Assembly (NCBI RefSeq): GCF_006345805.1 | Contig: NC_043000.1 | Location: 64,170,001-64,234,000, forward strand | Source of the DNA: Octopus sinensis | Lineage: Eukaryota | Length of the DNA stretch: 64,000 nt | Direction: 5' to 3' | Shown: positions 26,901 to 59,947 of the stretch, piece after piece | Layout: the number at the start of each line of letters is the position of its first letter | Numbering within the stretch: the stretch's first letter is position 1 | The notes under the pieces: generated by a model | What the model was told of the DNA's origin: nothing | Database searches by the model: none | Seen by the model: the letters and a program-made list of their open reading frames with translations, nothing else | Position numbers and translations under genes: made by a program

Positions 26901-28438
26901 GACATATATTAAAAAACTAATGACTTCCAAAAACCCTAGGAGAGAAAGAGGGAAGCGAGTTCTGTTAGAACTCTCTGTCCCTTTGGAGAGTTGCATCAAA
27001 GAGGATAGCAAGAGTAAAGGAAAGAAATATGCTGAGCTAGTGGAGTTGTGCCAAAGCAATGGGTAGTGAACAGGATGTGATCCCATTGAGATGGTATGCA
27101 GAGGGTTTGCAAGCCAGTCCTGCTACAGAGCACATAACATAGTTGACATAGGGACCAGAAGGCCTTCAAGTTGGCTGTGGAGGCAACAAAGTTTGCCTCA
27201 AAGTGGTTGTGAATCAGAAAGTGCAAGCCTTTAAAAGTGTAATGCTACCAGGGGTAGTGCTAACTGGATGCAAGCTTGATCAACCCTGGCTAGGTCATCT
27301 AAGTGAATGTGCCTGATAATGAGAGAGCTGAAACATCACTGCTGATGTGCCCTGGTGCATCACAGGAAGATGTATGGAAAAATATCTATTGCACATATTT
27401 ATTTAGAAATACAAATTAACCTAATTTTTCAACTGCTGGTGATTTTGATATGTCTGTAACTATATTTCCAATGTTTATAATTTTCAATTAGTCTCCAGCA
27501 TAATCAAGAATTTGAAGAAATTTTATTAATTTTTCATTCTTATGCTTTCATTTGGAATATAATAAAATGTTCAATTATAAAATTATGATGGATGGTTTTA
27601 AACTGGAAGATCTCTGTCATAAAACTAGAGGAAGTTTCATACAGATTGTTGTTAAAAGATTAAAGTAACCTTAGTCAACTTTGTTTGAACTAAGATACAA
27701 GAATAGTCAATTGAATACTTAGAAAATAATCTGAGTTTAGCAATCCAGACATACAAATGTAACATCTTTATCATGTTACTATCAGTTGGCCTTTGATATT
27801 TTAACTAGCCATTTTAAACTTGTGATCTTCATTTTAAAGACTGTAAAGGCTATATTTCACCAACTCCTCTATTGACTGATGTTTAGCCCGGTGTTGGAGA
27901 GAGTTTGTCATATAATTCAAATATTTTTAATGTTTCTTCTTTTCTATTCTCAAGCTTCATAAGGTGAGTTCAAATATTTGACCATTGTGATAGCTTGCCA
28001 CACCATCACAATGCATGGAGCACTTGTTTTCATCATTTAGCTTAGTACAAATTATTAAATGGAATCTGCTATGTTTTATAAATTTGTATGTTTATTACAG
28101 CTAAACCATAATTCTGTTAATGTTTTTTTTCTACTTTATTAATATCTAGGCTCATTAACTCCAATTTTAATTTTATTTTTTTAACATATATTGTGTTAAA
28201 AGATTCTTAAATCATTTAAATTAATAAGAGTTATTTTCTGGACATTTTGATAATATATACAAAAAAATCAACTTGTTAATTCATAAAAGTTAAGAATAGT
28301 ATTTTGTGCATGTATAAGAATTTTCACTGCATGTGTATAATATTATATATTTTATGCTGTATTAAAAAATTTAAGTGTTGTATCAAGTTTGCTTTTACGA
28401 TTTTAATTTGCACCATAATTAATATGTTTGTGTATACA

Positions 28439-28477
<39 letters not shown>

Positions 28478-34400: not shown

Positions 34401-37400
34401 TCCTAACTCTAACATTTTACATTTAATTATAAAAAGAAGAAATGTTAGCAACAAGTATTTGGTTGAATGAATCCCTGTTCAATTTCATCTATTTTAACAG
34501 TTACTCTGGAAAATATTAAATATAACTTGTTTGTTTTATTTTCCACTAGTTCTTCACATTCTCATGCTACTTTTAAACATTTCTTTTTACAGCTGGGAAA
34601 AAAGATTCTACAAAATGATTTACAAGTCTTGGCTCATAATTTATCTTTAGTTTCTAATGTAAGTACTTTTGTTTATATCCTTTGTTTCATTTTCTAATCT
34701 GTGTTTTATGTACTATGTCTGGAAGAAAGGGGTAGTGCCTATGCTGTTCACCAACACCCACAGGCCAATAATGTTGATGCCTGTAACATTTTGCTTAAAT
34801 TGGTGCAAGTTGACAACTGTAGAAAAGATATTAAGCAGGTAGAGTAATCTAGAGGGATGGTTTTCTATGAAAGAAGAACTTAGTGTAGTCATCATCATTC
34901 ATTGTTCGACCGTGGTCGAGACAATGGAATTTACCATGTTGCGCCAGACTTCACGGTCCATCATAGCATTACGGAGGTCCTGTTGCTGGATGCCTGTATC
35001 CCTGGAGATTACATCAGGGTAGGAGATTGTGCGCCCTCTGGTGTTGCAAGTAGATGGCTTCCAGAGGAGAAGAGTAGAAATTACTTCTTTTTCAGCTCTA
35101 CAACAATGTCCAGCAAACTGGACTCTCCTACCTTTCACAAGAGATGACACAGGTGGTAATTTCCCATATATTTGCATTTTAGTTGGATGGCGCCTCCACG
35201 AGAGATTTTGAGCTCTCATAAGGAGGCGAGTGTAGGTTCCATCCAACCGCCTCTCAAGCTTCTTTGATAACGTCCAGGTTTCTGAGCCATATAGTAGGAT
35301 TGGTTCGACTGTGGCTTTGAATATTTCAAGTTTGAATATTTCAACTTAGTGTAGTAATTAGCTAGATTCTTGGCAGGGTTTGATATATATCATCATCATT
35401 TAACATCTGCTTTCCATTCTGACATGAGGTAGATGGTTTGACTGGAGATTGTAAACTGAAGAGCTGCATCAGGCTCATTCTGTTTTGGTTTGGTTTCTAT
35501 GGCTGGATGCCCTTCATAACTCCAGCCACTCCACAGAGTAGGTTGGATGTCTATTACAATTCACTGGTACGAGTACCTTTCATGTGTCACCAGCACTGAC
35601 CAGAATATATATATATATGAAATTAAAAATATTGCATTTCTAAATCTCTCAGAGAGAGTTATACAGTAGCAGCACGATAAAGTGATGGTTTGTTGCCAAC
35701 TTAATGTGGCAGTCCCAGGAAAGGGAAGAATGCTACTGCTATTTAGCCCCAAGAAACACCATTTCCAGTTGGCTACATGATGCGAGGGAATGCAGTGTAA
35801 ATAACGGACAGTCAAGACTATTGAAAAGGTTGTAAGATGCAACGAAAATTTTAGGAGAATAAAAATAAGAAATAAGTGAAAATTTTACCGGTGAGTGTGT
35901 TACATTATAAGGCACAAAAAGAAAATGACTCTCCCCAGAAACAACAGAATATGCTTCAACACACGAACTCATATAAAGAATCTTGCAAACCAAATCCAAA
36001 AACGAAACCTCTGTAACATTTTGCTAAAAAATTTTTTTTGATTAATTGAATCATAAAATCAGATTCAGCCTAAAAAAAGTACATCAATGTACCAAATTTG
36101 AAAGTTTTCACTTAATTGTAAAATTTCAAAATCTGACAGCAACAGAAAGTATCTCCCTTTCTTTATGTCCATCTCTTTCATTTTTCACTTTTCTCATTGT
36201 AAACCTTCCCCCTCTATTTATATATTTACCACACTCACTTTCGGTATATGCACATCGCTCATGCTGGGTGTGTTTGTGTGTGTGTATGCATGTTTGTAAG
36301 GAGTTTCATTTGGGCAACAGAGTGATTTAGAAAAGGCATGTAAAAGATAATTTAATATCATACTTTTCTGTTAGTAAATACACTTTTTCTTACACACACA
36401 CATACACACCTGGATTAAAAATTTAAACTACAAAATTTTTTTCTGTTGTTGCTTAAATCCCAGCAATGGACCAACCATGGGTTAAACAAATCCTTGAAGA
36501 GGATGGTACCAGGTGGTTGTGAAAATTACCCAGCAATGACAGGATACTCAGCTAGTATAATATAAAATTGTGTATTTGTGAACTATACTCAAAATAATAT
36601 TACATTTTTTTTTGTATAGGGTGCCCTGAATGACACAGCTAAAGTTTTGATGCAAATCCATGATGTGACCTATCTTGCCATGGTAGAAGAAAAGGTATTT
36701 ACTTTGACAGTTTTCACTTCTACATATATTATGCTATTTCCTACAATTTTATTACTATTACATAAACTCATAGTTTGTGCCACATCATAGCACGATGTCA
36801 CTATATGCTCTACTAATTCAAAAGTATTTCATTCAATTCCAGTTAATATTAATTCTAATTTAGCTCCAGATAGCACATATCTACAAGCAAAAGCATTGTA
36901 GCTTTTTGTAACCATTCCTTTTTTTTTCTTTTTTTTCCCCCCTCAGACTATGTTATTAAATGTGTCCTTTAAGACAACATAGGGCGCTATTTGAATACTA
37001 TATCTGAAAAATTGAGCAGCTCTGTAGAGGCTCTCCCTTTGTGACTATTGCAGCTAATTTAGCCTATTTATCTGTACAATACATTTCTAATACTTATAAC
37101 TAATTACCATGTGTTAGATTAGCTACACAGTCATACATTTGTTTCACTATTATTGATGTTGGGTGTCTAGACTGTTCTGCTCAAGTGTGTGAGTATTTTG
37201 AAAATACATCATGGAGTGAAGACTGTGTCCTGCATAGTTATGGGCTGGCTTTTGGCTAGGCATAGCACCTGTTCAGCCACCCTGCCAGGAATACAACAAA
37301 GTCATGAGACTTAGCATGGTGGATTATAAAGAGGTAGTGGAAGAGCTTGACTCAGCCAATGATGCTTCTTACACTGATGCTGAGCAGAGGAATCCTAGAA

Positions 37401-43400: not shown

Positions 43401-46400
43401 AAATGAGTACTGAATTAAGCCATGGGGTTCATGTAATTAATTAAAACCTTGAAGGCAATGCCTCAATATTGTTGCAGTCAAACAACTAAAATGAGTAAAA
43501 GCTCATGTATATTTCCGTATCTAAAACCTAACTTATGGATTATTATTATTCACATATGTTTAATTTTGTTTTCTAGAATGGTTTTTGGTTCAGTTTAGGC
43601 TGGGCAGTGATTTTCTTTTTGCCAACTATAATTTTTGCAACAAAACTTGCTTCCCTTTATCGATGTCAGTATAAACGAGATCCGGCCCATGAGTAAGTAC
43701 TGTCATATCATTTTTATTTATGTTTCATAATATATGTATAATGAACTTACTGTATAGTGCTCAGGTGCACTACAACCCATCAGAAAATGTTTCCAAAACC
43801 GCATGTACAATCTTTTGAACTTGTTTCAACCATGTTCTCAGAAAGAAAGATATGGGTTGCATATTTGATAATTTTACATAAAATGTTTCTAATCATGTTA
43901 TGCATAGGCAAGAGACTTGTTCTCTAATGTCATAGTTTAGTTTTGATATTTAAGAATATTGGGTTTATCATCCATGGCTTAAAGGTCCTTTATTTTATAC
44001 CTGATGGAGAAAACTATGTTTTATCTCATACAATGTGTTATAACTGTTTGAGGATTCTGAAATGTCCCTATTAGATATCAAATCTACTATTTTTCAAAGA
44101 CAAATATTTGTTGAACAATTTATCTTTATATATAAAGCACATACACAATTATTTGATTGATTTGCAGAGCTGTAACTGTTCAGATAATTTATAGAACCCA
44201 AAGCAATGGTCAAATTATGCTTTTTAATTCTTTCCCTATCTATCCATCTGGGTCAGGTAACTTCCCCTGTCCATTGTAACCCTTCCATGACAGATACCCC
44301 AATCAAGTGATGAGGCCTGGGTTTTAGTCATATTGGTATTTTGCTAACTGAAATATCTATCTGCACACACTATGACTGCAGATGGTAGTGGTAGTTTGCT
44401 AACTGAACTAGTTGATTGTGGCCATTGACAGTTTGTTATCTGTTCATCTGCTCAGCATTTAGTGATACTCTCCATTGATTCAATAAGATTCATTTGCTGA
44501 AATAGTTCACATTCACCAAGCTGCATCTCCTGATTTCAGTGAACACTGTCTTGGGTAGTATAACGCTATTTAATCCATAGCTGGGACCCTGACAGGTGCT
44601 ACTTTTCTGGGTCAACATGAATTTGGGAATGATAGTAGCAAAGAGGAACTCCTCAACCAGGGTCCTGCTAGTTGATGCAGTTTAAAGTTATGCTCAGGAT
44701 TATTAAAACTTGCCTCATACTGAATTTTGTTTGTCTCTAAATATAATACACTATTAGAAGTTTGTCAACATTAGTGGAGGTTATATTAATGACCATTGCT
44801 GATATTAAATATGTGAAAGTAAAAATCAGTCAGAGAAATCAATAAATTTGTTATTTTGATAATGTAACTAAAAATTATTATTTAGAATATTATTTATTCA
44901 AGAATCTGTTGTACTTCTTTATAGGCTTCATCGTGGTGTTACTTCTGATAAGTCTCATCGTGATGTTACTTCTGATAAGTCTCATCATGTTGTTACTTCA
45001 GATAAGTCTCAGCAACATAGTGTTGTTACTTCAGATAAGTCTCAGCAACATCGTGTTGCTACTTCAGATAAGTCTCAGCAACAGCGTGTTGCTACTTCAG
45101 ATAAGTCTCAGCAAACCGATATCCCTGATAGGTTTGTTTTCCATTATGGAGTAATGTATTCCATAAATGTTAATGTCTTTTTAAATCTCACAATGTTGTA
45201 TTACAGAGTTCTGTTCAAATTTCAGTTGATGTTTTGTTTATTGTTTACTTATTCCCAGTATCATTAATTATATTCTAAATCAACTTATTGTGACAACTAT
45301 ATTTAAGGCAAGAGAAGTTTTCTTTGACATTTGGTTTGTCTGCATAACCTTGAACATTTAAAATAATAAAACTGTTTTCCATTACAGTTTCCTTGTGGTT
45401 GTCACCATAATTAATTTGGAACATAATTCAAGCTATATAGAATATTAAAATAAAAGTTCTTTTCTATGGAAATAAAGACTAACCTAAACTGTTTTAAGTT
45501 TTTTTTTTTTTTTATTATATTGCACTTGAGTTCAGTTCCCCAATTAACCCTTCTTTTTCAATTTTTTTTATTATCCCTAAACCCTTTTTCTCATTTGAAC
45601 CTAATTCTGGTTTCTTTTCTAACCAACAGCCCATGTTCCCCACTCTTTGCTCATCTGTTTTGTTTTCTAATTCTGTTTTCCAACTAACTTCTAAGCTAAA
45701 GGAAAAATGTCTTAGTACCAATTTACCAACCTATGCAAGATAATGCTGAATTCATCTATTTCGAAATATTTACTAAAATGAATGTAGCTAATAAAATTTG
45801 TTCCCATTTCACTTCTAAATATTTTATATCATGCTGCTCTGCTCTTAAAAAGTATAGATATTATACAAATTTGTCATAGTTTAGATGAGTAGTTATTCAT
45901 ATCTCTGCAGTGATGAAAGTTATTCTGATGGGGAAAATTATAATCATATACCTCTGTCTAGGTAAGTACCTGTCTTCTGAGATCCTCAATCACATTGCTT
46001 ACAAACCAGAAATCTCCTCCCAATTTTTGCTGGCATTACAATGGATTATAAAATCTGTTGTAGTATTTTACTTGACTGTCAAAAAAAAAGTATTGTCATA
46101 TGTTCCATTTGATAAGCAATTACAAATGTAAGTTTTAAATTGAAACCAATGCCAGTAAGTATCATTATTGTAATGATCTCCTGCTCCTTGATTTTCTATT
46201 GTATTGCCTGTCAATACAGTTGAGTTTTACTACTAATATAAGAATGTACTTACTTGTAATTTTACATGAGCTTATTTGATGTGATTACATTGATTTAAGG
46301 TTTGATTGTAGATAAGATTTAAATTATATTTTGTTACTATTTGAAAATGACAATGAAAATTGACATAATAATGAATTTGCTATAACTAATTTGAAGAAAA

Positions 46401-49400: not shown

Positions 49401-52400
49401 ATTGTGATAGTTGATATACTTTTAGTGAGTGTGTGAATGCTGTAATAGTTATCATGCTCTTAATGTATGCACTTGTATTTTGACAGTTGTATGTATGTGT
49501 GTGTGTGCATGCACATGTGTGTGTTATGATAGTTGGTGTATACTTAATGAGTTATGTATGTTTGTGTGTGTGTGAACATTTGCTGTAATGATGGTTTATG
49601 TATTGTGTGTGTATGTGTGTGTTGACTATCGATATAATCTTGGTAAATAAATGTTGTGCTCTGATAATTATTGTACTCTTGATGAACGAATGAATGAATG
49701 AATGCATTCATGTATTACGATAGAAGAGTATAGTTTGTTTGAAGCATTGTGATACAGAGGTAAAATAATAAATAACGAGGGAGGGCTTCAAACAATGCAA
49801 AAAGGGGAACTCACATTTCTAAATCATTCCGTTCTGATGCCTTTATGCCTGAAATATATAAAGGTTACTCACCTTTCCCTCTCTGCATTGTTAGAAGTTC
49901 TCCTTCTTCATTATTTGTTATTAACATGGGTGCTACCATGAATATTAATATTCATTAATTAATAAATATTAATATGGTGCTGCTGTAATATGAATTTTTG
50001 GCTTGGGCACATACCAAAAATGTGTCAGTTTCATTTTACACCAACATTTCTACTGCAGCATAAAATTATATTCATTTTTTTCTCTCAATCACTTAATGTC
50101 ATTGCTAATCAATGTGATCTTTGCATGTTTAATGTAAAATTTCATTTCAGCCTGTATTCTCATTATTCACTTGTATTTCAAATTATTATTAGCAATGTCA
50201 TTAATGACAATTGCCAGCAAAATTTCATTATGTGCTTGTTGTTGTGTTTATTTTCTTTAGCTCTGGATTATCCCTGGTTGAGCAGACCAATGATTGGACA
50301 TTTTAGCTTTGAGCATTCCATTTTTGTGACCAGGACTGTTTAATGCATTGTTTTTCATGATAGTATAATCTGAGGAAAATTTGACTGCTGTTTCTAGCAG
50401 GTCAAGCAGTGATATAGGACCTACCCACATTGGCTTGTTCATTCAATTTGGTATGGAATAATCTAGAAGTTGCACTAATTCACAACCTACTCTTAAGTAG
50501 ACTATCACATGCAACCTGATATGCATTAATCTCTATGGACACTCATATGTTTCCACAATCCAAGTCATATCTATAAAGGCATCTGAAAGACAGTAGTTGT
50601 TTTGTATGTGTGTGAAACTTGTGGATTATTAGTAGTTGATATATATATATAATGACAAAGGTAGCACAGAAGTACAGCAAAACAGTTTATGGTAAAAAAT
50701 GGTAGTACAGCCTAAATATGCTCAACCTTTCCTCATTTGTCAGCCAAATAAATAGCATTACAATTTCAACACCTTCTCACAATATTATTTGGTCTGGTGG
50801 TGTTGGTAATATGGAAGTTGCCAGAGTGTAGATGAATTGACTAAAAAAGTGAATGGAAATGTTTATACAAGGATGGTAGCTGAAAAAAAACCAAGTAGTC
50901 TTTCAAGTAAATAAGTTAAGACAAGCAAAGAATGAGAAAAATACAAAATGAAACACACATGTATGTATAAGATCTTCAGATGTAAATGACAAAATTAAGA
51001 CAAGCTGTGTGAAGTAACACTTAAAGGAAATTAACTGGGTATACTTGTACACACTTTATGGTCTCCGTAATGTATATCTGCATGTACTTTTCCATTATGT
51101 GGATTTTTGATTGGATTCATAGTCTATACTGATTGTAAGATTGCAATAAAATCATCCAAGGAACCAAGGAAAGTAATTATTGAGAGAGGGTGAAGTATGA
51201 TGAGCGCCAGAAGATTATTAAAATAATGTCATTCTAGAATATTCTGAATAAGAAGCAACTTAAAATTGTTCAGTGTTCCCTCTAAATTTTAATAGTTTTT
51301 GTCCAACAGAAACTTAAATTGTGCAAATTTTCTTCCATTAGCAAAAGTACAATCACAAACATAAGCAGCTGAAATGGGGTTCTTCTGAGGAATCTGTAGA
51401 GAGGGGTTACTCAACAGGGTGCATAGCTCAAAGATCTAGGAGTCGCAGCTTTGGTACTGCGGACATGTGATTAGAATATTACAGGAAAGAATTGTAAGAA
51501 AGCTTCTTCAAGCTAAGCCACTTGGCAAGAGACTGTGTGTATTCATATATGTGTGTGTGTATGAGGAATCCAATGTAGTTTGCAAAAAAGGGAACTGTCC
51601 TGATATAGACATTATAGATATGTGATGCCTATGAAGGGTTAACATGTTAGTGAATAACTTGCAAGCAATCAAAGTGGAAGGAACCTGCAGGAAACGAAGA
51701 CATGGGGAGAAATGGTAGAAGCTGATCTCAGACTGCTAAACCTCACAAAAGAGATAAATGACTGCATGAGAAGTGTTAAGATGCTGTGCTGGAGAAGTTC
51801 CATTGAACCCATGCTAGCACAAAGAAGCAGATTTAAAATTTACATTTATTTTTTAAAATATCTTTGTTATTAACTATATATCGATGTCATAAATACAACA
51901 ATCAGGTGATGTACCAATTTTGAAAGATATGAATTGCAATTAGCAATGCTAATTGGATATACAGGAAATAGAAATGTCTTGAAATGACGTATGGAAACTT
52001 ATGCATAATATTCATAGTTTTCTTGTTTCTAACTATCCTCTGTTAACTGCCCCACCTTTGTGTTTTTGCTTCTTAAACTTCATTGCTACCCATGTTAACC
52101 ACCCAACTTCATCTCTGTTTATGTTGACCACTCCTAATTCATCTCTACCTGTGTTAACCATCCCAAATTCATACCTACCTGTGTTAACCATACCAAAGTC
52201 ATCTCTACCCCTGTTAACCACCCCAAATTCATCTCTACCTCTGTTAACCATCCCAAATTCATCTCTACTTGTGTTAACTGCCCCAAATTCGTTTCTATCT
52301 CTTTACTCCACTTTTGTTATTACCTATGTTAACCACACCAAATTCATTTAAACCTGTGTTACTGCCCCAACGTTACATTTCTACCTATGTTAATTTTCCC

Positions 52401-55400
52401 AGTCTACAGAATTGTGAAATTATAAAACAACCCCCTTATACTTAAAGGTGAAGATCAAGTTTGCCAAACTCTCAAAGTCATCTTTGATGAGACTTGTAAA
52501 GCTTTTATCTATATCAGGCAAAACATTCAGGATAATTTTTGAATTTTAGTTATATTCACAGCTGCATGTTTTAAAACTCAGTTTTACCTTATAATCTCAT
52601 CTATTTAAGGCTCTCTTTATGTTTTATGTGTGTATCTTTTACCATCTCTTATTTGAATTTATCACTATAATTTCCTGCATGAATAGCCTTAAATCTAATT
52701 TACATTCCATTCCATCATTTTATATTGCAATTAATATAGAAAATCTCTATTCACAAATTGTGATACCCTTTTATTGTTACTATTATCATCATCAGCATTG
52801 ATGTGTACAAAAGACTAGATTCCTGGATTCTTTTGTACTACATTTCTCCGCCAATGTTTAGAAGTTCACTTTCTGTGTCTGTATTTGCAATAGCTTCAGC
52901 AAGTCACAAAATCTTTGTTGTGCTTTTAGCTCCAGATTAGTTCTGATCAAGCAGGCCTTTGATCAAATAGCAATCCAGCTATGACCACTTCCCATCTTTT
53001 AGACAGTGTATCTAACCTGTGTTATCCAATGTATCCTTCTTTGTTAAGATGTAGTTTGAGAAGAATTTAGTAGCTATATTTAATAGATAAAGCAACCATG
53101 GAGAGCACCTCTTATTGATGAAAATACCTTTGTAAAATGGTAAGGTAAAAACTTATTTGGTTTAGGTTTTGTATCAGAACTTACAGAAGACATTCTCAGT
53201 GCCTCAACCAATTTAATGACACAGATAAAGAAATAATTAAAATATCTAAATGTAATCTTGTAAGAATTGATAGAAATAAATTACTTTCATGCAGCAGGGA
53301 TGCTCTAGTAGAACTAATCAGAGCTATTCAACAACAAATATTCCTGTCATTTACTAGCTATATACAGTTTGATCTAGCATGTTACTTTTCTTCTTTCTTT
53401 TAATGTAATGTGTTAAAGCTGTCATTTGCTCTTTTATATCCTACTTGAGATAATTAGTATGTTCACCATGATTCAATTGTCAGTCACAAACTTTAAAATA
53501 CATCTGCATGATTGTGTCACGAGACTCTCAGGTAATGTCAATAAGTTTCTGAAATTACTCCTCACTTACAGGTTATCATTAAAGCCGTATAATAAGAATG
53601 GTCATTTTAATGTTGAACATGTAACCTCACAAATTGGTTTTCATTAATAATAAATGTATTTCTATTCTTTTTATGCTATGACTGGTTTAATGAAAATAAT
53701 GTAAAAATAGAACAGCTATTATCTGAAGGACAAAAGTTTCATCAAGCTGGATGGAGTACACTGCAAGCTACTGGCTGATTCAAAGGTGTGAACGGCTTGC
53801 TACAAATGGAGCTGCAGCCTCTGAAACACTGATGGTAGGACAAAAAGGCAGACAAAAAATTCAAACCTTTGCTAATTATCATGATGCGAAGATCTTTCTG
53901 TGCTAGTGTGAAAGAAGTGTACAGTCTGCAGAAAAGTGATAACACACAAGTGAGGAATAAAGATGGTTCATACATCTACACTGAGAAAAGTGACTTCATG
54001 AAATGTTGGCAGGAACATCTTAGGAGCTGTTAAATGGCCCTTAGAGTCTTAAGAAGCACTGGAATGTACCCAACAAATTTGACAAGATACCAGATTGGAT
54101 CTGTTTCTGAATATAAAGGAGATGGCAACTGCCAAAATTAGGGAAAGCTCCTAGTGTCATAAAAGTCTATAACTATGAGGAATTACACTATAGACTTTTC
54201 AAATTCTTCAGAGAATGCTGGAACTACAGTAAGCTCTCTCAACAATTCAAGATCACTTAGTCACCACATACAAGTGAAACATTTACCAGCTGGACTGGAA
54301 ACTTTTGAGGGATTTCCTTTCAATTGCAGGAAAAATTCTACAGTCAAACCAGATGAAATAACTGGAAGAAAAAAAAAACAAACAATCTTGAGCAAGATTC
54401 ACTTTGCCAGGACTACCATAGTTTTCTGTATTATCTACAGACAGAGTAGTCTCAACACCTTTGCTCTATAATCATATAAAAGAGCAAAACATCATTAAAG
54501 TTCCCTCATGAGAAAAAAATAAAAACCTCTTTTGCGTCTAAGTCATACTCAGTTAAGGGTGACAGCCAAAACGAATTCTCTCCTGTAGTAACTATATCAT
54601 TCAGTATTCTATTTCAGCATTTTGGAGTTATATTGTCTAGTTTGTTCTTCAAAATTCTGAAGATTGTTTTTTCTTTGGTGTTTTCCTTTCTTGTATTTCA
54701 AATGCAGATTCAAGCTTATATGGCAATTACATGATCTCAGTTCAGAGAAGAGATCAGTCTTATTGATCATAATTCTTCATCATTATCATTTAACTTCTGT
54801 CTTCCATGCTGGGATATGTTATCTAGTTCAACAGGATCTTGTTGAGTTGAAGAACTTTGTCATGTTTCAATGTCTGTCTTGGCTGGATGCCCTTCCTAAC
54901 ACCAACCACTTTACAGAATATACCAGAGGGAGGCTACTTTATGCTAAGTGTTGAAAGGTTAAAGTATGAAAAAGGGACTGGTTCCTTGCTGCAGTGGAAA
55001 TATATGGCAACTTTACTTCGTATGAGTGGGTAGGAATAATCACGATAAACTGTGCCCCCCAAGGTACAAGAATGTGAATGGAAGAGAAAGTAAGGACAGA
55101 AGGTTGAGAAAAGTGAGGCAGTAAATGTTGCAAGAGTGTATGGGGAGAGTGAGGGATTGTTAAAGATGGTACAAACAACTGTGTGAAATCCAAAATAACA
55201 ATGTTAATGGAAAGTACAATCTTTGATTAAATGAAATCTAATGTATTATTGTTTAATGGTTTTAGCTCTATATCTGTTTCATATAATCCACCTTCAATTA
55301 GAATACAGATACCTACAAAATGATTACATTTTTATTTCACTCATTCAAAATCATTTTTATTCTACTGGTAGCTGTAGATGAATGTGTCAATAAGGTACTG

Positions 55401-56230: not shown

Positions 56231-59200
56231 ATACCAGTTTTTATCTGAATAAAATGATAAATTGTGAAAGATAAAAAAAGACTGATGCTGATCTGCATCA
56301 CTAAAAAAATTGTATTTATTAGTATAAAAGTAAGATGATTTAAGTTGATATGCTACCAATATGAAAAGTTTCCAACATTTTGGACAGAGTTCTTTGGAGA
56401 AAAAGTTTGGTATGTGTTTTCTGAATGAGATATGAGACTTCAAAGATTTCATTTTACATTTTAAGACATGATTAATGGGAATTTGGCTGTATCAAATAGA
56501 TATGAGAATATTTGATAATTAAAATAAAATTCTGTAACAAACACACTTTTCAGCACATCTCACTGTTAACATTGCTCTGCAAAATTTCTAATTTTTTATT
56601 TTTATTTTCAGTTTATCTAACTTTTTTTTTACTACACTTTTTGCTTTGCTTTAAAATTGTTAATATATAGAATGCTTTTTATTTATTTGTTGCTAAATTG
56701 TTTGCTATTCTGAGTAGTGAATACTATGATTTTCTTGTATCCGTTGTAGAGTGAGTCTGGGGAAGTCAGGCCCTCAAGGAATGTCCAAAAGTACCTATGA
56801 TGATCCCCCAAGTAACAAGTATCATCCACTACCCCATTCACACTATAGTTATGGTGTTCCTGCCAACCAAAGCAACCATTATCCAGTATACCCTCCCCCT
56901 TCCTATCCAGAGAGTAAGTTTTGATATCTCCATTTTCCTGCCTATCTGTTCGTCTGTGTGTCTTTGTGTATCTTAAATTTTATGTTTGCAATGATACATT
57001 TTTGTACTGCCTTGCAATATTACCTCAAATATTGATGTTGAACAACATTGCAATTTAGAATGATTTCTTACACTTTCATTTTTAGTTTAGCATGGTGTTT
57101 CAATGCTAAGACCAGACAGCTTCAGTAATGACCTAAATTGTCTGCTCTATGTGTTAGAATTCATTATCCGTCAGCCTTTCTAAAATGCTAATATTTAATA
57201 TAACTACATTATATGTTCTTTAAATATTTATCAACTTGAAATCTTTAACAGCCAAAGCCTTAGACTGCTGTATACTTCTTAAGAACCTTGTAGTGAATTT
57301 CATGATCTCTAAATTTCTGAAAAGGTCTCTAATCAGTAAGCCATACTTTATGCTAACATTGGTGATTTAAGAATGTTTGAAGCATTTACATACCATCATA
57401 AGTAAAGAAACACTTTCTGCTGTGCACAATGTCAAGCTACCAAATTTTACTTTCAAAGCATTAGTCAACCTAGGGCTACAGTCAAAGATATTTGTCCAAG
57501 GTGCTACACAGTGATATCAAACCCTGAACATGTTTGTAAAGCAAATTTAATCACATGACTATGCTAGCTTTTTTAAATTTTTTTCTTTTGTTTTTGCTTC
57601 TTGCCAGATAGTTCTACTTTCAAAGTAATTTATAGATTAATAGAAATGCAATTTACTGAGGAATTATCTTGTATTTTATTTCAATGTATGTCTTCTAAAC
57701 AGTACTTTAAGTATGCTAAGTTTCTTACCTTTTAAGCTGTTTTTTCTTAGTATTCACACTTACGTTTCCCAGAGTACTTTAATTTCATTTAGCTTACTTT
57801 CATGCCTCATTATAATCACAGCTACATTTTTCTTTCTGGAAACTTACCAATATTTCTTATGTCTAATATACAGCTGTTCTACATATTTTATTTGAAACAA
57901 TTTTTAGAGTTACGTCCTTCCAGGATTGACTAATAGTTATACTTGATAATTTTTTTCATTTATTGCTAATTATACTAGAAGTTTGCTTAAGTTAATATAA
58001 ATGTTTTCTGCTACTTTTCAAGCTACCTACATTTATCTTTTGCTTTCTCTGGTTTTACACCTAAACTATATAGCTTTGTTGCAATTGAATAAAGATTGCA
58101 GATTATGGTGGTGTTTGTAAAAGATACTCTGTGTTTATTTAAATTACATATATAACTAACCTTTAGATGGTCACTTTTGGATGAGCTTCTTCCAAATATG
58201 TGTGCATTTTAAAAACTGAATATGACCTGTATCTAGTGATTACTTCACAATATAAGGGTCATAAAATGAGATGTTTTTATCACCTGCTGGTGTGGTAAAT
58301 CATTTCATAAGGCTAAAAGGAATATATTTTTAAACTAATAAAGCTATTCCTGAAACATGTGTTGACTACTTGATGACAAAATTAAATGAGTTATAAATAG
58401 TATTGGTTCTTTTTTCTTCTTTCTCTACTTTCAATTAAATTTTGGAAAGATTATGTAATTTATAATTCTCAAGTTCAGTAGAGTAAGCCTTAATAATTAG
58501 TGTACCACTATTTCATATCAGATAATACTTATCCGCATTTAAAATTAACTGTTTGGGAAACTGAAGACTCACGAGCTCGCCGCAGGTAATTAAAGTATAT
58601 ATTTTCTAATTCATCTATCATTTCCTACATCCATTTGGATCAATTAAAGCCAGAAGTTAGGACCAAGTATTTGGAGGTAAAAAAAAAAAAAACTGTATAT
58701 AAAATAGATTTAGTCATACTAGTAGGTGAAGTAATGTATAGTAAGTAGATTTATAGACATTTCGTGGTATCAGTAAATAAATGTATAAAAAGACCTGTAG
58801 TTATTTGAAGGTGAAGATATATCAGCAAGTGAATAATGTATACAAAGTAAATTTATAGGTATTTGAAGGCGAAGAACTGTATATAGATATAGATTAGTTG
58901 GTGAAGAAATTCTAATATTGTATAGGAAATTTCTTAGAATGTGTGATTCAATGATAAGTGTGAGTGGCTTACATTGTGACATTTAGAGGTGTTTTCATAA
59001 GTAAAATCCTAGCATTGATAAAAGACGGGGGAGTGGTATGTGAATAAAAATAAACTAGAAATACATTTACACTTTATATATATATAACACATCATTCATC
59101 ATTGCTGCATCCAGTTTGAGTTGTCTCCTAAAGTCGTTTTTGTTCATGTTTATCCTATAATTTTATATTTTGAATTTTTTTGTGTGTTTGTCACATATTG

Positions 59201-59947
59201 TAAAATACCAAGTTTTGAATCTGAAATTGCTGAATTGTTTTTCTTTCTTTCTTTTTCTTTTCAAATTGTGGTTCTATTGTTTCCTAGTTGTATATTTGCC
59301 TGGCAAGTTACTTGATCTTAGATTGTGTTGAAACTAAAATCCTTACATGTAGTAGCAATATAATAGCCATCTAATCCATATATACACTATTATACTCATT
59401 TTTGTTATTTTCTTGATAGTGCTGTATATTTAGACATGTCTGTGTTTTCTCATGGAACTGAACCAGGCAGATGTCCCAAAAGAATTTCTTTTTATACTTC
59501 ATACTATCACAAAATAAAACAAAATGTTAATATAACAGTGTTTCCAATGGCTATCATAATTCCTTCACAATGTAATTAGTTTCTATGCTGCCATTTTAAA
59601 AACAAACTGAGTTACATTCCTAAACAAACTGTATCATTCGAGAGCTATTTCTGACATAGAACTGAGAAACTCATTTTCTTTTAACAGTGAGTTTTCCAGA
59701 TATGTACAACTCAGTTTTGTACTCAGTCTGAAGACTTTTCATACTTTTTCCAAATTACCCCCAACACACACACACACCAAAAAAAAAAAAAAAAACAATG
59801 TATTCAAAATTGTTTACTTATCCAGTTTCTCTTTCATTTAAAGCACTTCAGTGCTTAGCCATAAATAGTGCCATTGAAATTTTTCCACTTTCTTATTGCA
59901 GCAAGAATGAACCCGAACCGTTACTGAGTCCCAACTCTGATGTTTGA
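2058..59947 (+). CDS. PROM1: Prominin-family (CD133-like) pentaspan membrane glycoprotein, 5'-partial, 24-exon model
   Basis: Join of 2058-2124, 6599-6682, 10047-10234, 11250-11318, 15225-15288, 16108-16181, 19605-19687, 19844-19990, 20288-20417, 22647-22723, 23476-23554, 26400-26546, 34593-34658, 36620-36694, 37916-37966, 39246-39326, 40160-40228, 41774-41863, 43577-43692, 44925-45131, 45911-45961, 56750-56913, 58522-58585, 59902-59947 = 2289 nt, in frame, all introns GT-AG. Prominin hallmarks: [68 protein letters not shown]. Several exon lengths and phases (64, 81, 69, 116 nt) match my recollection of human PROM1. The symbol denotes the family; the gene is probably co-orthologous to vertebrate PROM1/PROM2. 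Confidence 0.95.
4782..4818. repeat. (TA)n microsatellite
   Basis: Direct reading. Confidence 0.95.
4910..5854 (-). mobile_element. Decayed Tc1-family transposase (pseudogene)
   Basis: Minus-strand pieces [43 protein letters not shown] (HTH), [36 protein letters not shown] and C-terminal [19 protein letters not shown]; frameshifts and stops; TIRs not identified. Confidence 0.9.
5939..5974. repeat. (TG)18 microsatellite
   Basis: Direct reading. Confidence 0.97.
6005..6200. repeat. Interspersed repeat family D, ~200 bp, degenerate (copies about 1-190, 10320-10540, 10940-11140, 19195-19390, 39350-39550, 46820-47160, 50270-50420, 52920-53110)
   Basis: Shared motifs gacctatgatcaaag, tccagct.tgacca and gatttggctgctatttctagcagg in both orientations. 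Confidence 0.7.
6599..6682 (+). CDS. PROM1: Prominin exon 2 ([28 protein letters not shown]), phase 1-1
   Basis: tctttttcattatcag|AT...GAAG|gtaagt; 84 nt, open. Confidence 0.88.
6808..7190 (-). mobile_element. tRNA-derived SINE family A (other copies about 13417-13715 +, 23070-23393 -, 41895-42235 -, 63435-63785 -; fragments near 1130, 3780, 9240, 26220, 57440)
   Basis: Shared core gcttctttcagtttcc.tctaccaaatccactcacaaggctttgg..ggctatagtagaagacacttgcccaagg; tRNA-like head with B-box-like ggttc..gtccc on the sense strand. Confidence 0.85.
10047..10234 (+). CDS. PROM1: Prominin exon 3 ([16 protein letters not shown]...NCTNCNEIK...ANFSK), phase 1-0
   Basis: ttttttcag|AA...AAG|gtaaga; 188 nt; coiled-coil-like with the Cys pair of extracellular loop 1; overlaps ORF 10031-10246. 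Confidence 0.92.
11250..11318 (+). CDS. PROM1: Prominin exon 4 ([23 protein letters not shown]), phase 0-0
   Basis: cttttttttcag|CTG...GAA|gtaagt; 69 nt, open. Confidence 0.88.
11903..12046 (+). mobile_element. RTE-clade LINE RT fragment
   Basis: [48 protein letters not shown]. Confidence 0.85.
12070..12498 (+). mobile_element. SINE/non-autonomous family B with (GAT)n tail and an internal ~64-bp tandem unit (other copies about 4130-4560, 9705-9888, 23620-24350, 25045-25140, 29004-29960, 35388-35600, 43120-43330, 54778-55190)
   Basis: Shared core ggcattaggaagggcatccagctgtagaaac and tail aacccatgccagcatggaaaac.gacgttaaatgatgatg. Confidence 0.85.
14283..14527 (-). mobile_element. CR1/L2-type LINE 3' end
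   Basis: [30 protein letters not shown] matches the CR1 C-terminal motif; (TAA)n-like run next to the 3' end; a short copy of the same 3' end lies near 43750-43790. Confidence 0.8.
14833..15091 (+). mobile_element. hAT-type MITE copy 1 (degenerate TIRs)
   Basis: tagtggttctcaatt...ggttgagaattatta; internal sequence shared with 38138 (inverted) and 47179. Confidence 0.75.
15225..15288 (+). CDS. PROM1: Prominin exon 5 ([21 protein letters not shown]), phase 0-1
   Basis: ttctcattgcag|GCT...AAAA|gtaagt; 64 nt; required to bridge phase 0 to phase 1. Confidence 0.88.
16108..16181 (+). CDS. PROM1: Prominin exon 6 ([25 protein letters not shown]), phase 1-0
   Basis: ttttatttag|AT...GAA|gtaagt; 74 nt; open only in phase 1. 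Confidence 0.88.
16946..17157. mobile_element. Tc1/mariner-type MITE
   Basis: 26-bp TIRs tagggtgacccaaaagtaggtttaca / tgtaaacctacttttgggccaccctg (24/26 match), flanked by TA. Confidence 0.9.
18100..18985 (-). mobile_element. RTE-clade LINE reverse transcriptase fragment
   Basis: ORF 18535-19053 ([37 protein letters not shown]...[15 protein letters not shown]...[12 protein letters not shown]), continuing to [12 protein letters not shown]. Confidence 0.95.
19605..19687 (+). CDS. PROM1: Prominin exon 7 ([28 protein letters not shown]), phase 0-2
   Basis: ctgtctttaaacag|GAT...TCC|gtgagt; 83 nt. Confidence 0.9.
19844..19990 (+). CDS. PROM1: Prominin exon 8, TM3 and Cys-rich intracellular loop ([48 protein letters not shown]), phase 2-2
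   Basis: gtttttcatttag|A...AC|gtgagt; 147 nt; strong prominin motif. Confidence 0.96.
20288..20417 (+). CDS. PROM1: Prominin exon 9, TM4 ([43 protein letters not shown]), phase 2-0
   Basis: ttttatttcag|T...CAG|gtaaca; 130 nt; strong prominin motif. Confidence 0.96.
20757..21663. mobile_element. Mariner-like non-autonomous remnant with an internal TIR-like copy
   Basis: Ends tatgagatgtgttaaaaaagtatctgacc and ttttttgaatgcacttcata resemble inverted mariner TIRs; a similar motif tacgaggtgtgttcaaaagtatcc lies near 21080. Confidence 0.6.
22647..22723 (+). CDS. PROM1: Prominin exon 10 ([26 protein letters not shown]), phase 0-2
   Basis: ttatttgtag|CCA...GGA|gtaagt; 77 nt. Confidence 0.88.
23476..23554 (+). 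CDS. PROM1: Prominin exon 11 ([26 protein letters not shown]), phase 2-0
   Basis: catcttctttcag|A...AAT|gtgagt; 79 nt; matches the prominin C..N...Y..L.L pattern. Confidence 0.92.
26400..26546 (+). CDS. PROM1: Prominin exon 12 ([49 protein letters not shown]), phase 0-0
   Basis: aatttttcag|GAA...GAG|gtaagt; 147 nt; overlaps ORF 26307-26594. Confidence 0.92.
26950..27375 (+). mobile_element. 3' fragment of an RLE-endonuclease non-LTR retrotransposon (HERO-like)
   Basis: [52 protein letters not shown] and [19 protein letters not shown] match the ELTVPWE..KY.ELV..C..GW..PIEVGCRGF..WLW.KR signature as recalled; followed by a 3' UTR-like tract. Confidence 0.8.
27955..27963 (+). CDS. Candidate microexon m1, 9 nt (LHK), phase 0-0
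   Basis: tttcttcttttctattctcaag|CTTCATAAG|gtgagt: long pyrimidine tract and consensus donor. Confidence 0.6.
28441..28486. repeat. (TG)n followed by TA-rich microsatellite
   Basis: Direct reading. Confidence 0.93.
28764..28778 (+). CDS. Candidate microexon m2, 15 nt (ISNEK), phase 0-0
   Basis: ttttgctttgtag|ATATCAAATGAGAAG|gtttgt. Confidence 0.5.
30054..31310 (-). mobile_element. Decayed RTE-clade LINE (RT to C-terminus, internally deleted)
   Basis: Minus ORFs [62 protein letters not shown] and [19 protein letters not shown]. Confidence 0.93.
31358..31398. repeat. Interrupted (TG)n microsatellite
   Basis: Direct reading. Confidence 0.93.
32909..32928 (+). CDS. Candidate microexon m3, 20 nt (DIGNAA+AT), phase 0-2
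   Basis: About 55-nt pyrimidine-rich tract ending ttctttctgcttctcccttgttgaag|GATATTGGAAATGCAGCAAT|gtgagt. Confidence 0.6.
34066..34080 (+). CDS. Candidate microexon m4, 15 nt (A+DIVN+AG), phase 2-2
   Basis: ctctaatttttctgttttcag|AGATATAGTTAACAG|gtgatt; open only in phase 2, the phase left by m3. Confidence 0.55.
34301..34313 (+). CDS. Candidate microexon m5, 13 nt (A+WCST), phase 2-0
   Basis: gtgttttattag|ATGGTGTAGTACA|gtaata; restores phase 0 after m3/m4; weakest member of the chain. Confidence 0.35.
34593..34658 (+). CDS. PROM1: Prominin exon 13 ([22 protein letters not shown]), phase 0-0
   Basis: ttctttttacag|CTG...AAT|gtaagt; 66 nt; pattern .GK.....DL...A.NL fits the expected prominin segment. 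Confidence 0.88.
34764..34838 (+). CDS. Candidate cassette exon 13b ([25 protein letters not shown]), phase 0-0
   Basis: caacacccacag|GCC...CAG|gtagag; 75 nt, open, symmetric, 105-nt intron after exon 13; acceptor tract only moderate. Confidence 0.45.
34890..35342 (-). mobile_element. Young 5'-truncated RTE/RTE-X-type LINE insertion with 13-bp TSD
   Basis: Uninterrupted frame [60 protein letters not shown]; (TGA)n tail; CpGs retained; AACTTAGTGTAGT at 34877-34889 and 35343-35355. Confidence 0.93.
36620..36694 (+). CDS. PROM1: Prominin exon 14 ([25 protein letters not shown]), phase 0-0
   Basis: tttttttgtatag|GGT...AAG|gtattt; 75 nt. Confidence 0.88.
37916..37966 (+). CDS. PROM1: Prominin exon 15 ([17 protein letters not shown]), phase 0-0
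   Basis: gacttatttcag|AAT...ACG|gtaaat; 51 nt. Confidence 0.87.
38138..38349 (-). mobile_element. hAT-type MITE copy 2 with 8-bp TSD
   Basis: TIRs CAGTGGCTCTCAACC / GGTTGGGAACCACTG; direct repeat ATGTAGAC at 38130-38137 and 38350-38357. Confidence 0.92.
39246..39326 (+). CDS. PROM1: Prominin exon 16 ([27 protein letters not shown]), phase 0-0
   Basis: ttgtttttcag|GAA...GTG|gtaaat; 81 nt. Confidence 0.9.
39887..39952. repeat. Three tandem copies of tttatggccattacacaccat(t)
   Basis: Directly visible 21-22-bp triplication. Confidence 0.95.
40160..40228 (+). CDS. PROM1: Prominin exon 17 ([23 protein letters not shown]), phase 0-0
   Basis: ttcatttatacag|GTG...AAG|gtaatt; 69 nt. Confidence 0.88.
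41774..41863 (+). CDS. PROM1: Prominin exon 18 ([30 protein letters not shown]), phase 0-0
   Basis: ttgattttcag|TTA...TTA|gtaagt; 90 nt; conserved C.P....C....PL motif. Confidence 0.95.
43577..43692 (+). CDS. PROM1: Prominin exon 19, TM5 ([38 protein letters not shown]), phase 0-2
   Basis: ttgttttctag|AAT...TGA|gtaagt; 116 nt; hallmark TM5 motif. Confidence 0.97.
44925..45131 (+). CDS. PROM1: Prominin exon 20, tandem-repeat cytoplasmic exon ([68 protein letters not shown]), phase 2-2
   Basis: tacttctttatag|G...ATAG|gtttgt; 207 nt; the repeat array is bounded exactly by splice sites and is open in the phase left by exon 19. Confidence 0.8.
45911..45961 (+). CDS. PROM1: Prominin exon 21 ([16 protein letters not shown]), phase 2-2
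   Basis: atatctctgcag|T...TAG|gtaagt; 51 nt; acidic/Tyr plus HIPL resembles the prominin tail D..YD...IP(M/L) segment. Confidence 0.85.
47179..47410 (+). mobile_element. hAT-type MITE copy 3
   Basis: caatggttcttaact...ggttgagaaccaccg; same internal sequence as copy 1. Confidence 0.8.
48180..48385 (+). mobile_element. SINE family C (other copies about 7350-7545 +, 33610-33715 +, and a tandem pair at 41330-41715 -)
   Basis: ggcaagctggcagaattgttagcacgctgggcaaaatgcttagc...ttctgagttcaaat...gcctttc...gtcgataaaat.agtaccagt. Confidence 0.85.
51380..51840 (+). mobile_element. Two decayed RTE C-terminal/3' fragments
   Basis: [31 protein letters not shown] (about 51430-51535) and QAIKVEGTC...[12 protein letters not shown]-like piece with a 3' tail (about 51650-51840). 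Confidence 0.7.
52090..52390. repeat. 30-bp minisatellite, about 9-10 degenerate units (atctctacctgtgttaaccatcccaaattc)
   Basis: Visible 30-bp periodicity; the best units are at 52141-52290. Confidence 0.9.
53720..54330 (+). mobile_element. Decayed RTE (BovB-like) LINE fragment, pre-RT linker and RT N-terminus
   Basis: Frameshifted pieces [21 protein letters not shown] and [31 protein letters not shown]. Confidence 0.65.
56146..56226. repeat. Compound (TA)/(CA) microsatellite
   Basis: Direct reading. Confidence 0.95.
56750..56913 (+). CDS. PROM1: Prominin exon 22 ([54 protein letters not shown]), phase 2-1
   Basis: tttcttgtatccgttgtag|A...GAGA|gtaagt; 164 nt; GC-richer than its flanks, open, Pro/Tyr/His-rich. 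Confidence 0.85.
58522..58585 (+). CDS. PROM1: Prominin exon 23 ([21 protein letters not shown]), phase 1-2
   Basis: tttcatatcag|AT...GCAG|gtaatt; 64 nt; open in the required phase; CpG-rich in CpG-poor surroundings. Confidence 0.72.
59902..59947 (+). CDS. PROM1: Prominin terminal coding exon 24 ([15 protein letters not shown]), phase 2
   Basis: ttttccactttcttattgcag|C AAG ... GAT GTT TGA; phase matches exon 23; ends in a class-I PDZ-type -SDV. Confidence 0.72.

What the first reader, a model, noticed from the sequence alone, without database searches (positions are those of the whole stretch)
44925..45131. Minisatellite-encoded cytoplasmic exon: six V(T/AT)SDKS repeats just after TM5
Seen: three 27-bp units ([27 protein letters not shown]) and three 33-bp units ([33 protein letters not shown]) fill a 207-nt phase 2-2 exon almost exactly from splice site to splice site. 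The unit grew from 27 to 33 bp partway along the array, which records a stepwise expansion. Established: vertebrate PROM1 has a short tail of about 50-60 aa with no such repeat. Inference: a recently expanded, skippable Ser/Thr-rich disordered spacer or multisite phosphorylation array. It may be copy-number polymorphic and would change the distance from the membrane to the downstream Tyr, PY and PDZ motifs.
Basis: partly seen in the sequence, partly recalled or inferred. Interest (0 to 1): 0.7.

Follow-up and report, generated by a model that had tools for sequence, protein, structure and literature searches.

The report
Young minisatellite in octopus prominin intron
A real 27/33-bp tandem repeat lies in the intron just after the last membrane-spanning exon of an octopus prominin gene; it could be spliced in as an exon, but no available evidence shows that it is, so it is most likely an ordinary young intronic repeat.

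Summary
The repeat is real. It spans 44928-45114 as 27-bp and 33-bp units, 92-94% alike, bounded by AG|...|GT at 44925-45131. That stretch is 207 nt and open in the phase left by the upstream exon. The gene call is also right: the window carries Octopus "vulgaris" LOC115210705, prominin-1-A (Pfam Prominin E=4e-92). The TM5 exon is 43577-43692 and the first tail exon is 45911-45961.

No evidence I could reach supports exon status:
- An octopus transcript from another species joins the TM5 exon directly to the tail exon.
- The orthologous intron of Argonauta hians has no repeat and no unit-like sequence, while the neighbouring 51-nt tail exon and its flanking intron are conserved.
- The donor is GTTTGT; all 21 verified donors of this gene have A or G at +3.
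- Differences between units are 6 non-synonymous to 1 synonymous.
- Ten other frame-preserving pseudo-exons pass the same splice thresholds in this gene's introns.

Against pure chance: both periods are multiples of 3, and only about 0.4% of random flank placements give an equally good frame-preserving exon. RefSeq isoforms X1-X3 could not be inspected.

Verdict: intronic minisatellite about 0.65; genuine lineage-specific cassette exon about 0.25. RNA-seq junction reads would settle it.

The parts
44928..45114 (+). Minisatellite core: 27-bp units followed by 33-bp units (2x27 + 4x33, or 3x27 + 3x33 + CAGCAA, depending on register)
   Evidence: TRF; core motif found 6 times against 0.02 expected; sequence read
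44903..44927 (+). Decayed 'copy 0' of the unit (two 1-nt gaps); it forms the tract just upstream of the putative acceptor AG (44923-44924)
   Evidence: Local alignment to the unit; acceptor PWM 4.9, in the lowest 3 of 22 verified acceptors; 5% of intronic AGs score as high
45115..45133 (+). Partial, decayed 3' copy (ACCGATATCCCTGATAG|GT) carrying the putative donor GT at 45132-45133 (GTTTGT)
   Evidence: CTGATAGGT against the unit's CTGATAAGT; donor PWM 2.2; 16% of intronic GTs score as high; 21/21 verified donors have A/G at +3, this one has T
44925..45131 (+).
   Evidence: Translation; the only frame-preserving AG..GT pair at these thresholds around the array; no transcript or protein evidence found
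43577..43692 (+). Verified exon encoding TM5 and the juxtamembrane segment ([38 protein letters not shown]), donor CATGA|GTAAGT
   Evidence: tblastn and blastn to transcript-derived P0002/L001 (92-94% identity) and to A. hians; end of the Pfam Prominin match
43693..45910 (+). Intron between the TM5 exon and the first tail exon (phase 2) that contains the array; no other dispersed repeat found
   Evidence: Gene model; self-blast; interior not alignable with the A. hians intron L003 69441-71180
45911..45961 (+). Verified 51-nt tail mini-exon ([17 protein letters not shown]); a conserved alternative cassette
   Evidence: Present in P0002 and P0004, skipped in A. hians isoform X4; exon plus about 150 nt of intron on each side conserved with A. 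hians
56750..56913 (+). Verified tail exon ([11 protein letters not shown]...[11 protein letters not shown]), carries the PPPSY motif
   Evidence: tblastn and blastn to P0002/L001 and A. hians
59902..59931 (+). Coding part of the last exon (TRMNPNRY + stop)
   Evidence: Assembled CDS; blastn to L001 and A. hians

Best explanation
The feature is a young, lineage-specific minisatellite in the 2.2-kb intron between the TM5 exon and the first cytoplasmic-tail exon of the octopus prominin-1-A gene.

It most likely arose by replication slippage or unequal exchange in two rounds. First a 27-bp unit was duplicated. Then a 33-bp unit was duplicated, made of the 27-bp unit plus 6 bp of the original 3' flank. 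Decayed copies remain at both ends. The expansion order is inferred from shared substitutions: TCT>TCA in units 3-6 and GTT>GCT in units 5-6.

In the main mRNA the array is removed with the intron, and the TM5 exon is joined to the conserved 51-nt mini-exon. This is shown for a related octopus and for cephalopod relatives; it is inferred for this species.

Because its periods are multiples of 3 and the tract is bounded by AG and AG|GT, the tract is a ready-made proto-exon. At most it is included as a minor, species-specific isoform.
For: 1. An ortholog mRNA from another octopus (Logan contig of SRR3401912, described as an octopus metatranscriptome in PMC11662614) reads ...CCCAAGA|CGATGAA..., that is TM5 exon joined directly to the mini-exon, with no insert.
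2. The Argonauta hians genomic locus (L003) has the TM5 exon and the mini-exon. Its orthologous intron has no array with a matching unit (TRF finds only a 25-bp AT-rich 10-bp/7-bp mini-repeat at 70801-70827), and no unit-like sequence occurs anywhere in the 83 kb. The mini-exon and its flanks, by contrast, are 67-82% identical.
3. The window's 871-aa 'skip' protein is collinear, without gaps, with four cephalopod relatives. The distance from the NPxxGxW motif to the IP[LM] motif is 53-63 residues in all 12 relatives that carry both motifs. It is 54 in the skip form and would be 123 with the array.
4. The donor is GTTTGT. All 21 verified donors of this gene have A/G at +3. The score-density likelihood ratio for the donor is 0.4-0.55.
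5. Ten other frame-preserving pseudo-exons pass the same thresholds in this gene's introns.
6. A second 3n-period minisatellite (30 bp x7.3, 52079-52297) with long open frames sits in the next intron. A. hians has a 31-bp x17 array in its corresponding downstream intron. Minisatellites are therefore common in these introns.
7. Seven inferred substitutions between units are 6 non-synonymous to 1 synonymous in the proposed frame (read directly), which gives no sign of coding constraint.
8. Neither open frame of the array finds any protein among 5.8 billion clusters. This evidence is weak; see the Against line.
9. The one annotated isoform whose size is known (X4, 890 aa) cannot be the skip form plus the 69-aa exon, which would be 940 aa.
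Against: 1. Both periods (27 and 33) and the whole AG-to-GT tract (207) are multiples of 3.
2. When the array is placed at random intronic positions of this window, only 0.4% of placements give a frame-preserving exon with splice scores at least as good. With decayed-unit flanks the figure is 0.15-0.3%.
3. The acceptor score favours a real site (density likelihood ratio 2.3-4.7).
4. The encoded peptide is hydrophilic and plausible as a disordered linker.
5. Alternative small exons in the cytoplasmic tail are typical of prominins (PMC10967083).
6. RefSeq isoforms X1-X3 of LOC115210705 and RNA-seq from this species could not be examined.
7. The protein word-index search is incomplete: it missed the A. 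hians protein despite a 33-residue exact match. Its negative results therefore carry little weight.
8. A young exon would not be expected in Argonauta in any case.
Confidence: 0.65

Rival explanations
1. The tract is a genuine, recently born alternative cassette exon, an exonised minisatellite. It is included in some isoforms or tissues and inserts 69 disordered Ser/Thr/Asp/Lys/His/Gln-rich residues between the juxtamembrane segment after TM5 and the conserved acidic mini-exon and PPPSY tail. This would lengthen the tether and possibly add phosphorylation sites.
For: The tract has AG|...|GT boundaries, is 207 nt (69x3) and is open in the required phase. Both unit lengths are multiples of 3. 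The chance of an equally good frame-preserving exon around the array is about 0.4%. The acceptor likelihood ratio is 2.3-4.7. The prominin tail is a known hotspot of alternative small exons (PMC10967083, PMC2924886), and the neighbouring 51-nt exon is itself an alternative cassette. At least four predicted isoforms exist and only X4 was seen.
Against: No transcript or protein evidence was found. The array is absent from A. hians. The donor has T at +3, unlike 21/21 verified donors. Unit differences are 6 non-synonymous to 1 synonymous. Inclusion would double a spacing that is conserved in 12 relatives. Pseudo-exons of the same quality are common in this gene. A rough Bayes estimate gives a likelihood ratio of about 45 from frame and splice features. 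That is built from 1/0.29 for a frame-preserving AG..GT pair, about 1.5 for the splice scores, and 9 for both periods being multiples of 3. With a prior of about 1% and about 0.3-0.5 from the other evidence, the posterior is about 0.15-0.25 (the prior is my own assumption).
Confidence: 0.25
2. The array is a non-coding intronic element with a function in RNA processing. For example, it could be a repeated binding platform about 780 nt upstream of the conserved alternative 51-nt mini-exon that tunes its inclusion, with copy number as a modifier.
For: The array lies next to a regulated-looking cassette exon whose flanking intron is conserved. The 3' half of the unit (ACTTC.GATAAGTCT) shows only one variable position, TCT/TCA, across the six copies.
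Against: The conservation around the mini-exon stops at about 45754 and does not reach the array. The array is absent in A. hians, where the mini-exon is still alternatively used. No known RNA family matches. The near-invariance of the 3' half is expected for young copies (with 7 changes, the chance that all fall within the first 18 of the 27 positions is about 0.06, own arithmetic).
Confidence: 0.06
3. The copy number or the unit structure is an assembly artefact, that is a collapsed or expanded repeat in the reference.
For: Tandem repeats are error-prone in assemblies, and only one haplotype is visible here.
Against: The array is only 187 bp, well within single reads. Its units carry ordered, nested substitutions that are unlikely to come from misassembly.
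Confidence: 0.03

Closest known systems
Alternative small exons in the cytoplasmic C-terminal domain (IC3) of vertebrate prominin-1/CD133 (exons 26-29; at least 10 alternative C-termini)
   Same: It is the same protein family (Pfam Prominin) and the same region, just after TM5. The exon lengths are frame-preserving and skippable. The neighbouring 51-nt octopus exon behaves this way. Sources: PMC10967083, PMC2924886.
   Different: The vertebrate tail exons are not tandem-repeat arrays and are supported by cDNA. Here there is no transcript evidence, and the sequence is a young minisatellite absent from the nearest available relatives.
Coding VNTRs in cytoplasmic regions of membrane or signalling proteins (e.g. 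DRD4 exon-3 48-bp repeat, PER3 54-bp repeat; own knowledge)
   Same: The units are 3n-bp minisatellites that would encode a repeated, disordered cytoplasmic peptide. Copy-number polymorphism is plausible.
   Different: Those repeats lie inside constitutive, expressed exons. This array would have to be an entire cassette exon, with a weak donor and no evidence of expression.
Ordinary intronic minisatellites/VNTRs and pseudo-exons (e.g. SLC6A4 intron-2 VNTR; exonisation of intronic repeats such as Alu; own knowledge)
   Same: It is located in an intron and is lineage-specific, with decayed terminal copies and neutral-looking unit divergence. Splice-like sites occur by mutation of repeat sequence. 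Other minisatellites sit in neighbouring introns.
   Different: It is unusually exon-like: 3n periods, a 3n total length, an open frame in the correct phase, and AG/GT at both ends (about 0.4% by simulation).

Membership tests
Prominin family (Pfam PF05478), host gene | Significant match to the Prominin profile through the last transmembrane segment | tested here: met
   The assembled window protein matches at E=3.7e-92 and 310 bits (cut-off 34.3), profile positions 197-799 of 799. It is 100% identical to residues 207-399 of O. vulgaris prominin-1-A isoform X4.
Minisatellite / VNTR | Head-to-tail tandem units of about 10-100 bp, at least 3 copies, high identity | tested here: met
   TRF finds 27 bp x3.1 (92%) and 33 bp x4.0 (94%).
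Minisatellite / VNTR | Copy number varies between individuals or closely related species | not testable with these tools
   No second individual or congeneric genome was reachable. The array is absent from Argonauta hians, which shows lineage specificity only.
Protein-coding cassette exon | Canonical AG/GT boundaries of usable strength | tested here: inconclusive
   AG and GT are present. The acceptor PWM of 4.9 is within but low in the range of 22 verified sites. The donor GTTTGT scores 2.2 (only one of the 21 verified donors scores lower) and has T at +3, against A/G in 21/21 verified donors.
Protein-coding cassette exon | Frame preserved on inclusion and on skipping, with no stop codon | tested here: met
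   The tract is 207 nt (69 codons) and open in phase 2. The skip and inclusion products both read through to the same stop.
Protein-coding cassette exon | Present in spliced transcripts or annotated proteins | tested here: not met
   The ortholog transcript L001 lacks it. No protein contains the peptide. The 940-aa and 923-aa inclusion products are not in the collection. Isoform X4 (890 aa) is incompatible with simple inclusion. Caveat: no RNA-seq of this species and no view of isoforms X1-X3, so this is absence of evidence.
Protein-coding cassette exon | Sequence conservation or coding-type substitution pattern | tested here: not met
   There is no homologous sequence in the A. hians intron. 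Unit differences are 6 non-synonymous to 1 synonymous (read).
Multisite phosphorylation array | Match to a defined kinase consensus and detected phosphopeptides | not tested
   No tool here addresses this. TSDKS does not match any kinase consensus I know of (own knowledge).

The most novel reading that the evidence does not exclude
The minisatellite is a newly born exon caught early. An intronic 27/33-bp array expanded in frame, acquired AG and AG|GT boundaries at or within its own decayed terminal copies, and is now spliced into some prominin-1-A mRNAs of Octopus vulgaris/sinensis. This more than doubles the distance between TM5 and the conserved PPPSY tail, possibly with copy-number polymorphism.
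Probability: 0.22. Interest if true: 0.5.

Novelty: new member of a known kind. Interest (0 to 1): 0.28.

Why it matters
If the array is intronic, it is one more minisatellite in a repeat-rich cephalopod genome. Its use would be as a warning for exon prediction from sequence alone, and possibly as a polymorphic marker.

If it is spliced in, it would be a clean example of de novo exon birth from a minisatellite in a conserved membrane-organising protein. Its age is bracketed by the absence of the array in Argonauta. It would also be a natural experiment on tail length in prominin function.

Either way, the work establishes that the octopus prominin tail has a conserved alternative 51-nt cassette exon, as vertebrate PROM1 tails do.

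Tried and rejected
- **Pfam scan of joined stop-free segments, 36-52 kb.** Nothing found, because the exons are too short. They were found instead with a simple AG...GTRAGT exon enumerator.
- **Amino-acid-composition exon finder.** It found only transposon reverse-transcriptase fragments.
- **Exact look-ups.** Ten ORFs around the array and five full-length isoform models were tried; none is in the collection.
- **Protein search with the second open frame of the array.** No hits. It was meant to catch ORFs called on genomic or pre-mRNA contigs.
- **Placing the extra 19 aa of isoform X4.** I used length, molecular weight and pI, after calibrating the pK set on five proteins of the same table. 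No convincing exon emerged. The stretch 27969-28025 fits the length, mass and pI, but its splice scores are about -11 at both ends. The combination 'inclusion minus exons 16+17' is rejected by pI (8.07 against 7.83).
- **Hypothesis that decayed repeat flanks make splice-like sites more likely.** Rejected by simulation: 0.15-0.3% against 0.4% for random flanks.
- **Rfam.** No family matches anywhere in the window.
- **Supplements of two octopus proteome papers.** No tail peptides were found. The stored protein sequences are cut at about 400 residues.

Full report
**Observation.** Tandem Repeats Finder reports a 27-bp period (44928-45011, 3.1 copies, 92% matches) running into a 33-bp period (44983-45114, 4.0 copies, 94%). 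A 20-nt core of the unit occurs six times with at most one mismatch, all inside the array, against 0.02 expected by chance. The tract is bounded by ...ttctttatAG| and |GTttgt and is 207 nt long. In the phase left by the upstream exon it reads [68 protein letters not shown].

Three refinements apply.
- A second forward frame is also open.
- The 33-bp unit is the 27-bp unit plus CAGCAA, which is also the first 6 nt of the 3' flank. The change of period is therefore best read as a second duplication round with a shifted boundary.
- The array is flanked by decayed copies of itself: 44903-44918 upstream, and CTGATAGGT against the unit's CTGATAAGT downstream. The upstream copy lies in the tract just before the putative acceptor AG, and the putative donor lies within the downstream copy.

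**Gene context.** A simple AG...GTRAGT exon enumeration gave prominin-like exons. A protein search with these exons joined returned two transcript-derived proteins, P0001 and P0002, both carrying Pfam Prominin. With tblastn and blastn they define 22 exons on the + strand from 2058 to about 59931. The assembled protein matches Pfam Prominin at E=3.7e-92, and the match ends at the TM5 exon.

A supplementary table of an octopus ink proteome paper prints the first 399 residues of UniProt A0A7E6ESL5, 'prominin-1-A isoform X4', Octopus vulgaris, LOC115210705. Residues 207-399 are identical to the window's exons 1-7. The window is therefore that gene. The TM5 exon is 43577-43692 (...RDPAH, CATGA|GTAAGT). 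The next verified exon is a 51-nt mini-exon, 45911-45961 ([17 protein letters not shown]). The array lies in the 2.2-kb phase-2 intron between them.

**Is it an exon? Transcript and protein evidence.**
- P0002/L001 come from SRR3401912, which is described as an octopus metatranscriptome (PMC11662614). Exon identity to the window is about 80-94% at the nucleotide level. This transcript joins the TM5 exon directly to the mini-exon (...CCCAAGA|CGATGAA...).
- Neither open frame of the array finds any protein among 5.8 billion clusters. Full-length inclusion models are not in the collection. These negatives are weak: the word-index search also missed the Argonauta protein despite a 33-residue exact match, and no protein of the window's own species was returned.
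- Isoform X4 is 890 aa. My canonical 'skip' model is 871 aa and the inclusion model is 940 aa, so X4 is not skip plus array. I could not place its extra 19 residues.

**Is it an exon? Comparative evidence.** The representative search returned GAB1600674.1, the Argonauta hians prominin-1-A-like isoform X4, and its 83-kb genomic locus L003.
- The TM5 exon and the mini-exon are both present in A. hians.
- The mini-exon plus about 150 nt of intron on each side is 67-82% identical to the window.
- The orthologous intron (L003 69441-71180) has no matching array; TRF reports only a 25-bp AT-rich mini-repeat there. No unit-like sequence occurs anywhere in L003, and the interior of the intron is not alignable.
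- The skip protein is collinear with four cephalopod relatives.
- The distance from the NPxxGxW motif to the IP[LM] motif is 53-63 residues in the 12 relatives that have both. It is 54 in the skip form and 123 with the array.

**Is it an exon? Intrinsic signals.** I built a position weight matrix from the gene's own 21 donors and 22 acceptors.
- The candidate donor scores 2.2; verified donors range from 1.7 to 12.8. 16% of intronic GTs score as high.
- The candidate acceptor scores 4.9; verified acceptors range from 2.6 to 13.5. 5% of intronic AGs score as high.
- All 21 verified donors have A or G at +3. The candidate has T.
- Ten other frame-preserving pseudo-exons pass the same thresholds in this gene's introns.
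- Unit differences amount to about 7 substitutions, 6 non-synonymous and 1 synonymous in the proposed frame (read).
- A second minisatellite with a 3n period and long open frames lies in the next intron (52079-52297).

The coincidence is nevertheless not trivial. With the array dropped at random intronic positions, some frame-preserving AG..GT pair encloses it in 29% of trials. A pair with scores at least as good as observed encloses it in only 0.4% of trials, or 0.15-0.3% with decayed-unit flanks. Both periods are also multiples of 3.

**Weighing.** Using score densities rather than tails gives a likelihood ratio of 0.4-0.55 for the donor and 2.3-4.7 for the acceptor. Together with 1/0.29 for a frame-preserving pair and 1/9 for the two 3n periods, the features favour 'exon' by roughly 45-fold. 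Against that I set a prior of about 1% that a non-conserved intronic minisatellite is coding (my assumption). The transcript, conservation and substitution evidence then counts further against it. I estimate about 0.25 for a genuine, probably minor and lineage-specific cassette exon, and about 0.65 for a plain intronic minisatellite that is a proto-exon at most.

**Mechanism.**
- Shown: tandem structure, nested substitutions, decayed ends, and intronic position relative to verified exons.
- Inferred: origin by slippage or unequal exchange in two rounds after the split from the Argonauta lineage, and removal with the intron in the main mRNA.
- Speculative: any role of the encoded peptide. TSDKS matches no kinase consensus that I know of, and the C-terminus ...NPNRY does not look like a typical PDZ ligand (own knowledge, not tested here).

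**Comparison with what is known.** Vertebrate PROM1 is noted for alternative small exons in its cytoplasmic tail and at least 10 alternative C-termini (PMC10967083; PMC2924886). A skippable tail exon would therefore be a variant of a known theme, not a new kind of feature. What would be new is an exon made entirely of a young minisatellite. The closest analogues, from my own knowledge, are coding VNTRs such as DRD4 exon 3 and PER3. Ordinary intronic VNTRs and pseudo-exons are the null model.

**Verdict.** Junction reads from RNA-seq of this species would settle the question in one step.

Noticed in passing
window 45911-45961 with flanks 45754-46186; L003 71043-71336: The 51-nt tail mini-exon and about 150 nt of intron on each side are conserved between the window and Argonauta hians; the flanks are as conserved as the exon. 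The A. hians isoform X4 skips it. It looks like a conserved, regulated alternative cassette in the prominin tail, paralleling vertebrate PROM1.
   Followed up: partly
window 27955-27963 (within conserved block 27912-28030); L003 about 53870-53985: Candidate 9-nt microexon CTTCATAAG (Leu-His-Lys). It has a pyrimidine-rich acceptor and a strong donor, AAG|GTGAGT (PWM 11.6), conserved in A. hians, in the 8-kb intron after exon 12. Further syntenic conserved blocks lie at 28290-28473, 28679-28841 and 30327-30384.
   Followed up: partly
window 26547-26860; L002 1900-2173: The other octopus's transcript L002 splices exon 12 (...EYEEE, ends at 26546) to an acceptor at about 26801 (tttttttttag|AAAAATTAG). 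This gives EYEEEKN-stop, a truncated prominin isoform or poison exon lacking the rest of extracellular loop 2, TM5 and the tail. The acceptor and the stop codon are present in the window too.
   Followed up: partly
window 52079-52297: A second minisatellite (30 bp x7.3, 79% matches) in the next intron. It is open in + frame 0 and in - frame 1 and has no splice-like flanks. I used it as an internal control showing that 3n-period open arrays occur in this gene's introns.
   Followed up: yes
L003 74860-75386: Argonauta hians carries an unrelated 31-bp x17 minisatellite (93% matches) in the intron just upstream of its tail exon.
   Followed up: no
whole gene; UniProt A0A7E6ESL5: The annotated isoform X4 is 890 aa (101.2 kDa, pI 7.83). 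This is 19 residues longer than the 871-aa model that is collinear with four cephalopod relatives. The extra segment could not be located in the window.
   Followed up: partly
window 18300-18876 (-), 34941-35315 (-), 29300-29619 (+): Reverse-transcriptase-like and other transposon-derived open frames lie inside prominin introns, along with a 100-bp x1.9 repeat at 29120-29312.
   Followed up: no
window 59889-62260; L003 80171-82433: The last exon and 3' UTR are alignable with A. hians over 2.4 kb at 70% identity. About 230 nt upstream and 160 nt downstream of exon 56750-56913 are 80% identical. This is unusually strong non-coding conservation around the tail exons.
   Followed up: no
window 56750-56913 and 59902-59931: The tail motif YPVYPPPSY (a PPxY motif) is conserved in the four cephalopod tails, and a C-terminal Tyr is conserved in all six cephalopod and mollusc prominins read. 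The extreme C-terminus (-NRY) does not look like a canonical PDZ ligand.
   Followed up: partly
tool behaviour: The word-indexed protein search did not return the A. hians prominin even though it shares a 33-residue exact stretch with the query.
   Followed up: yes
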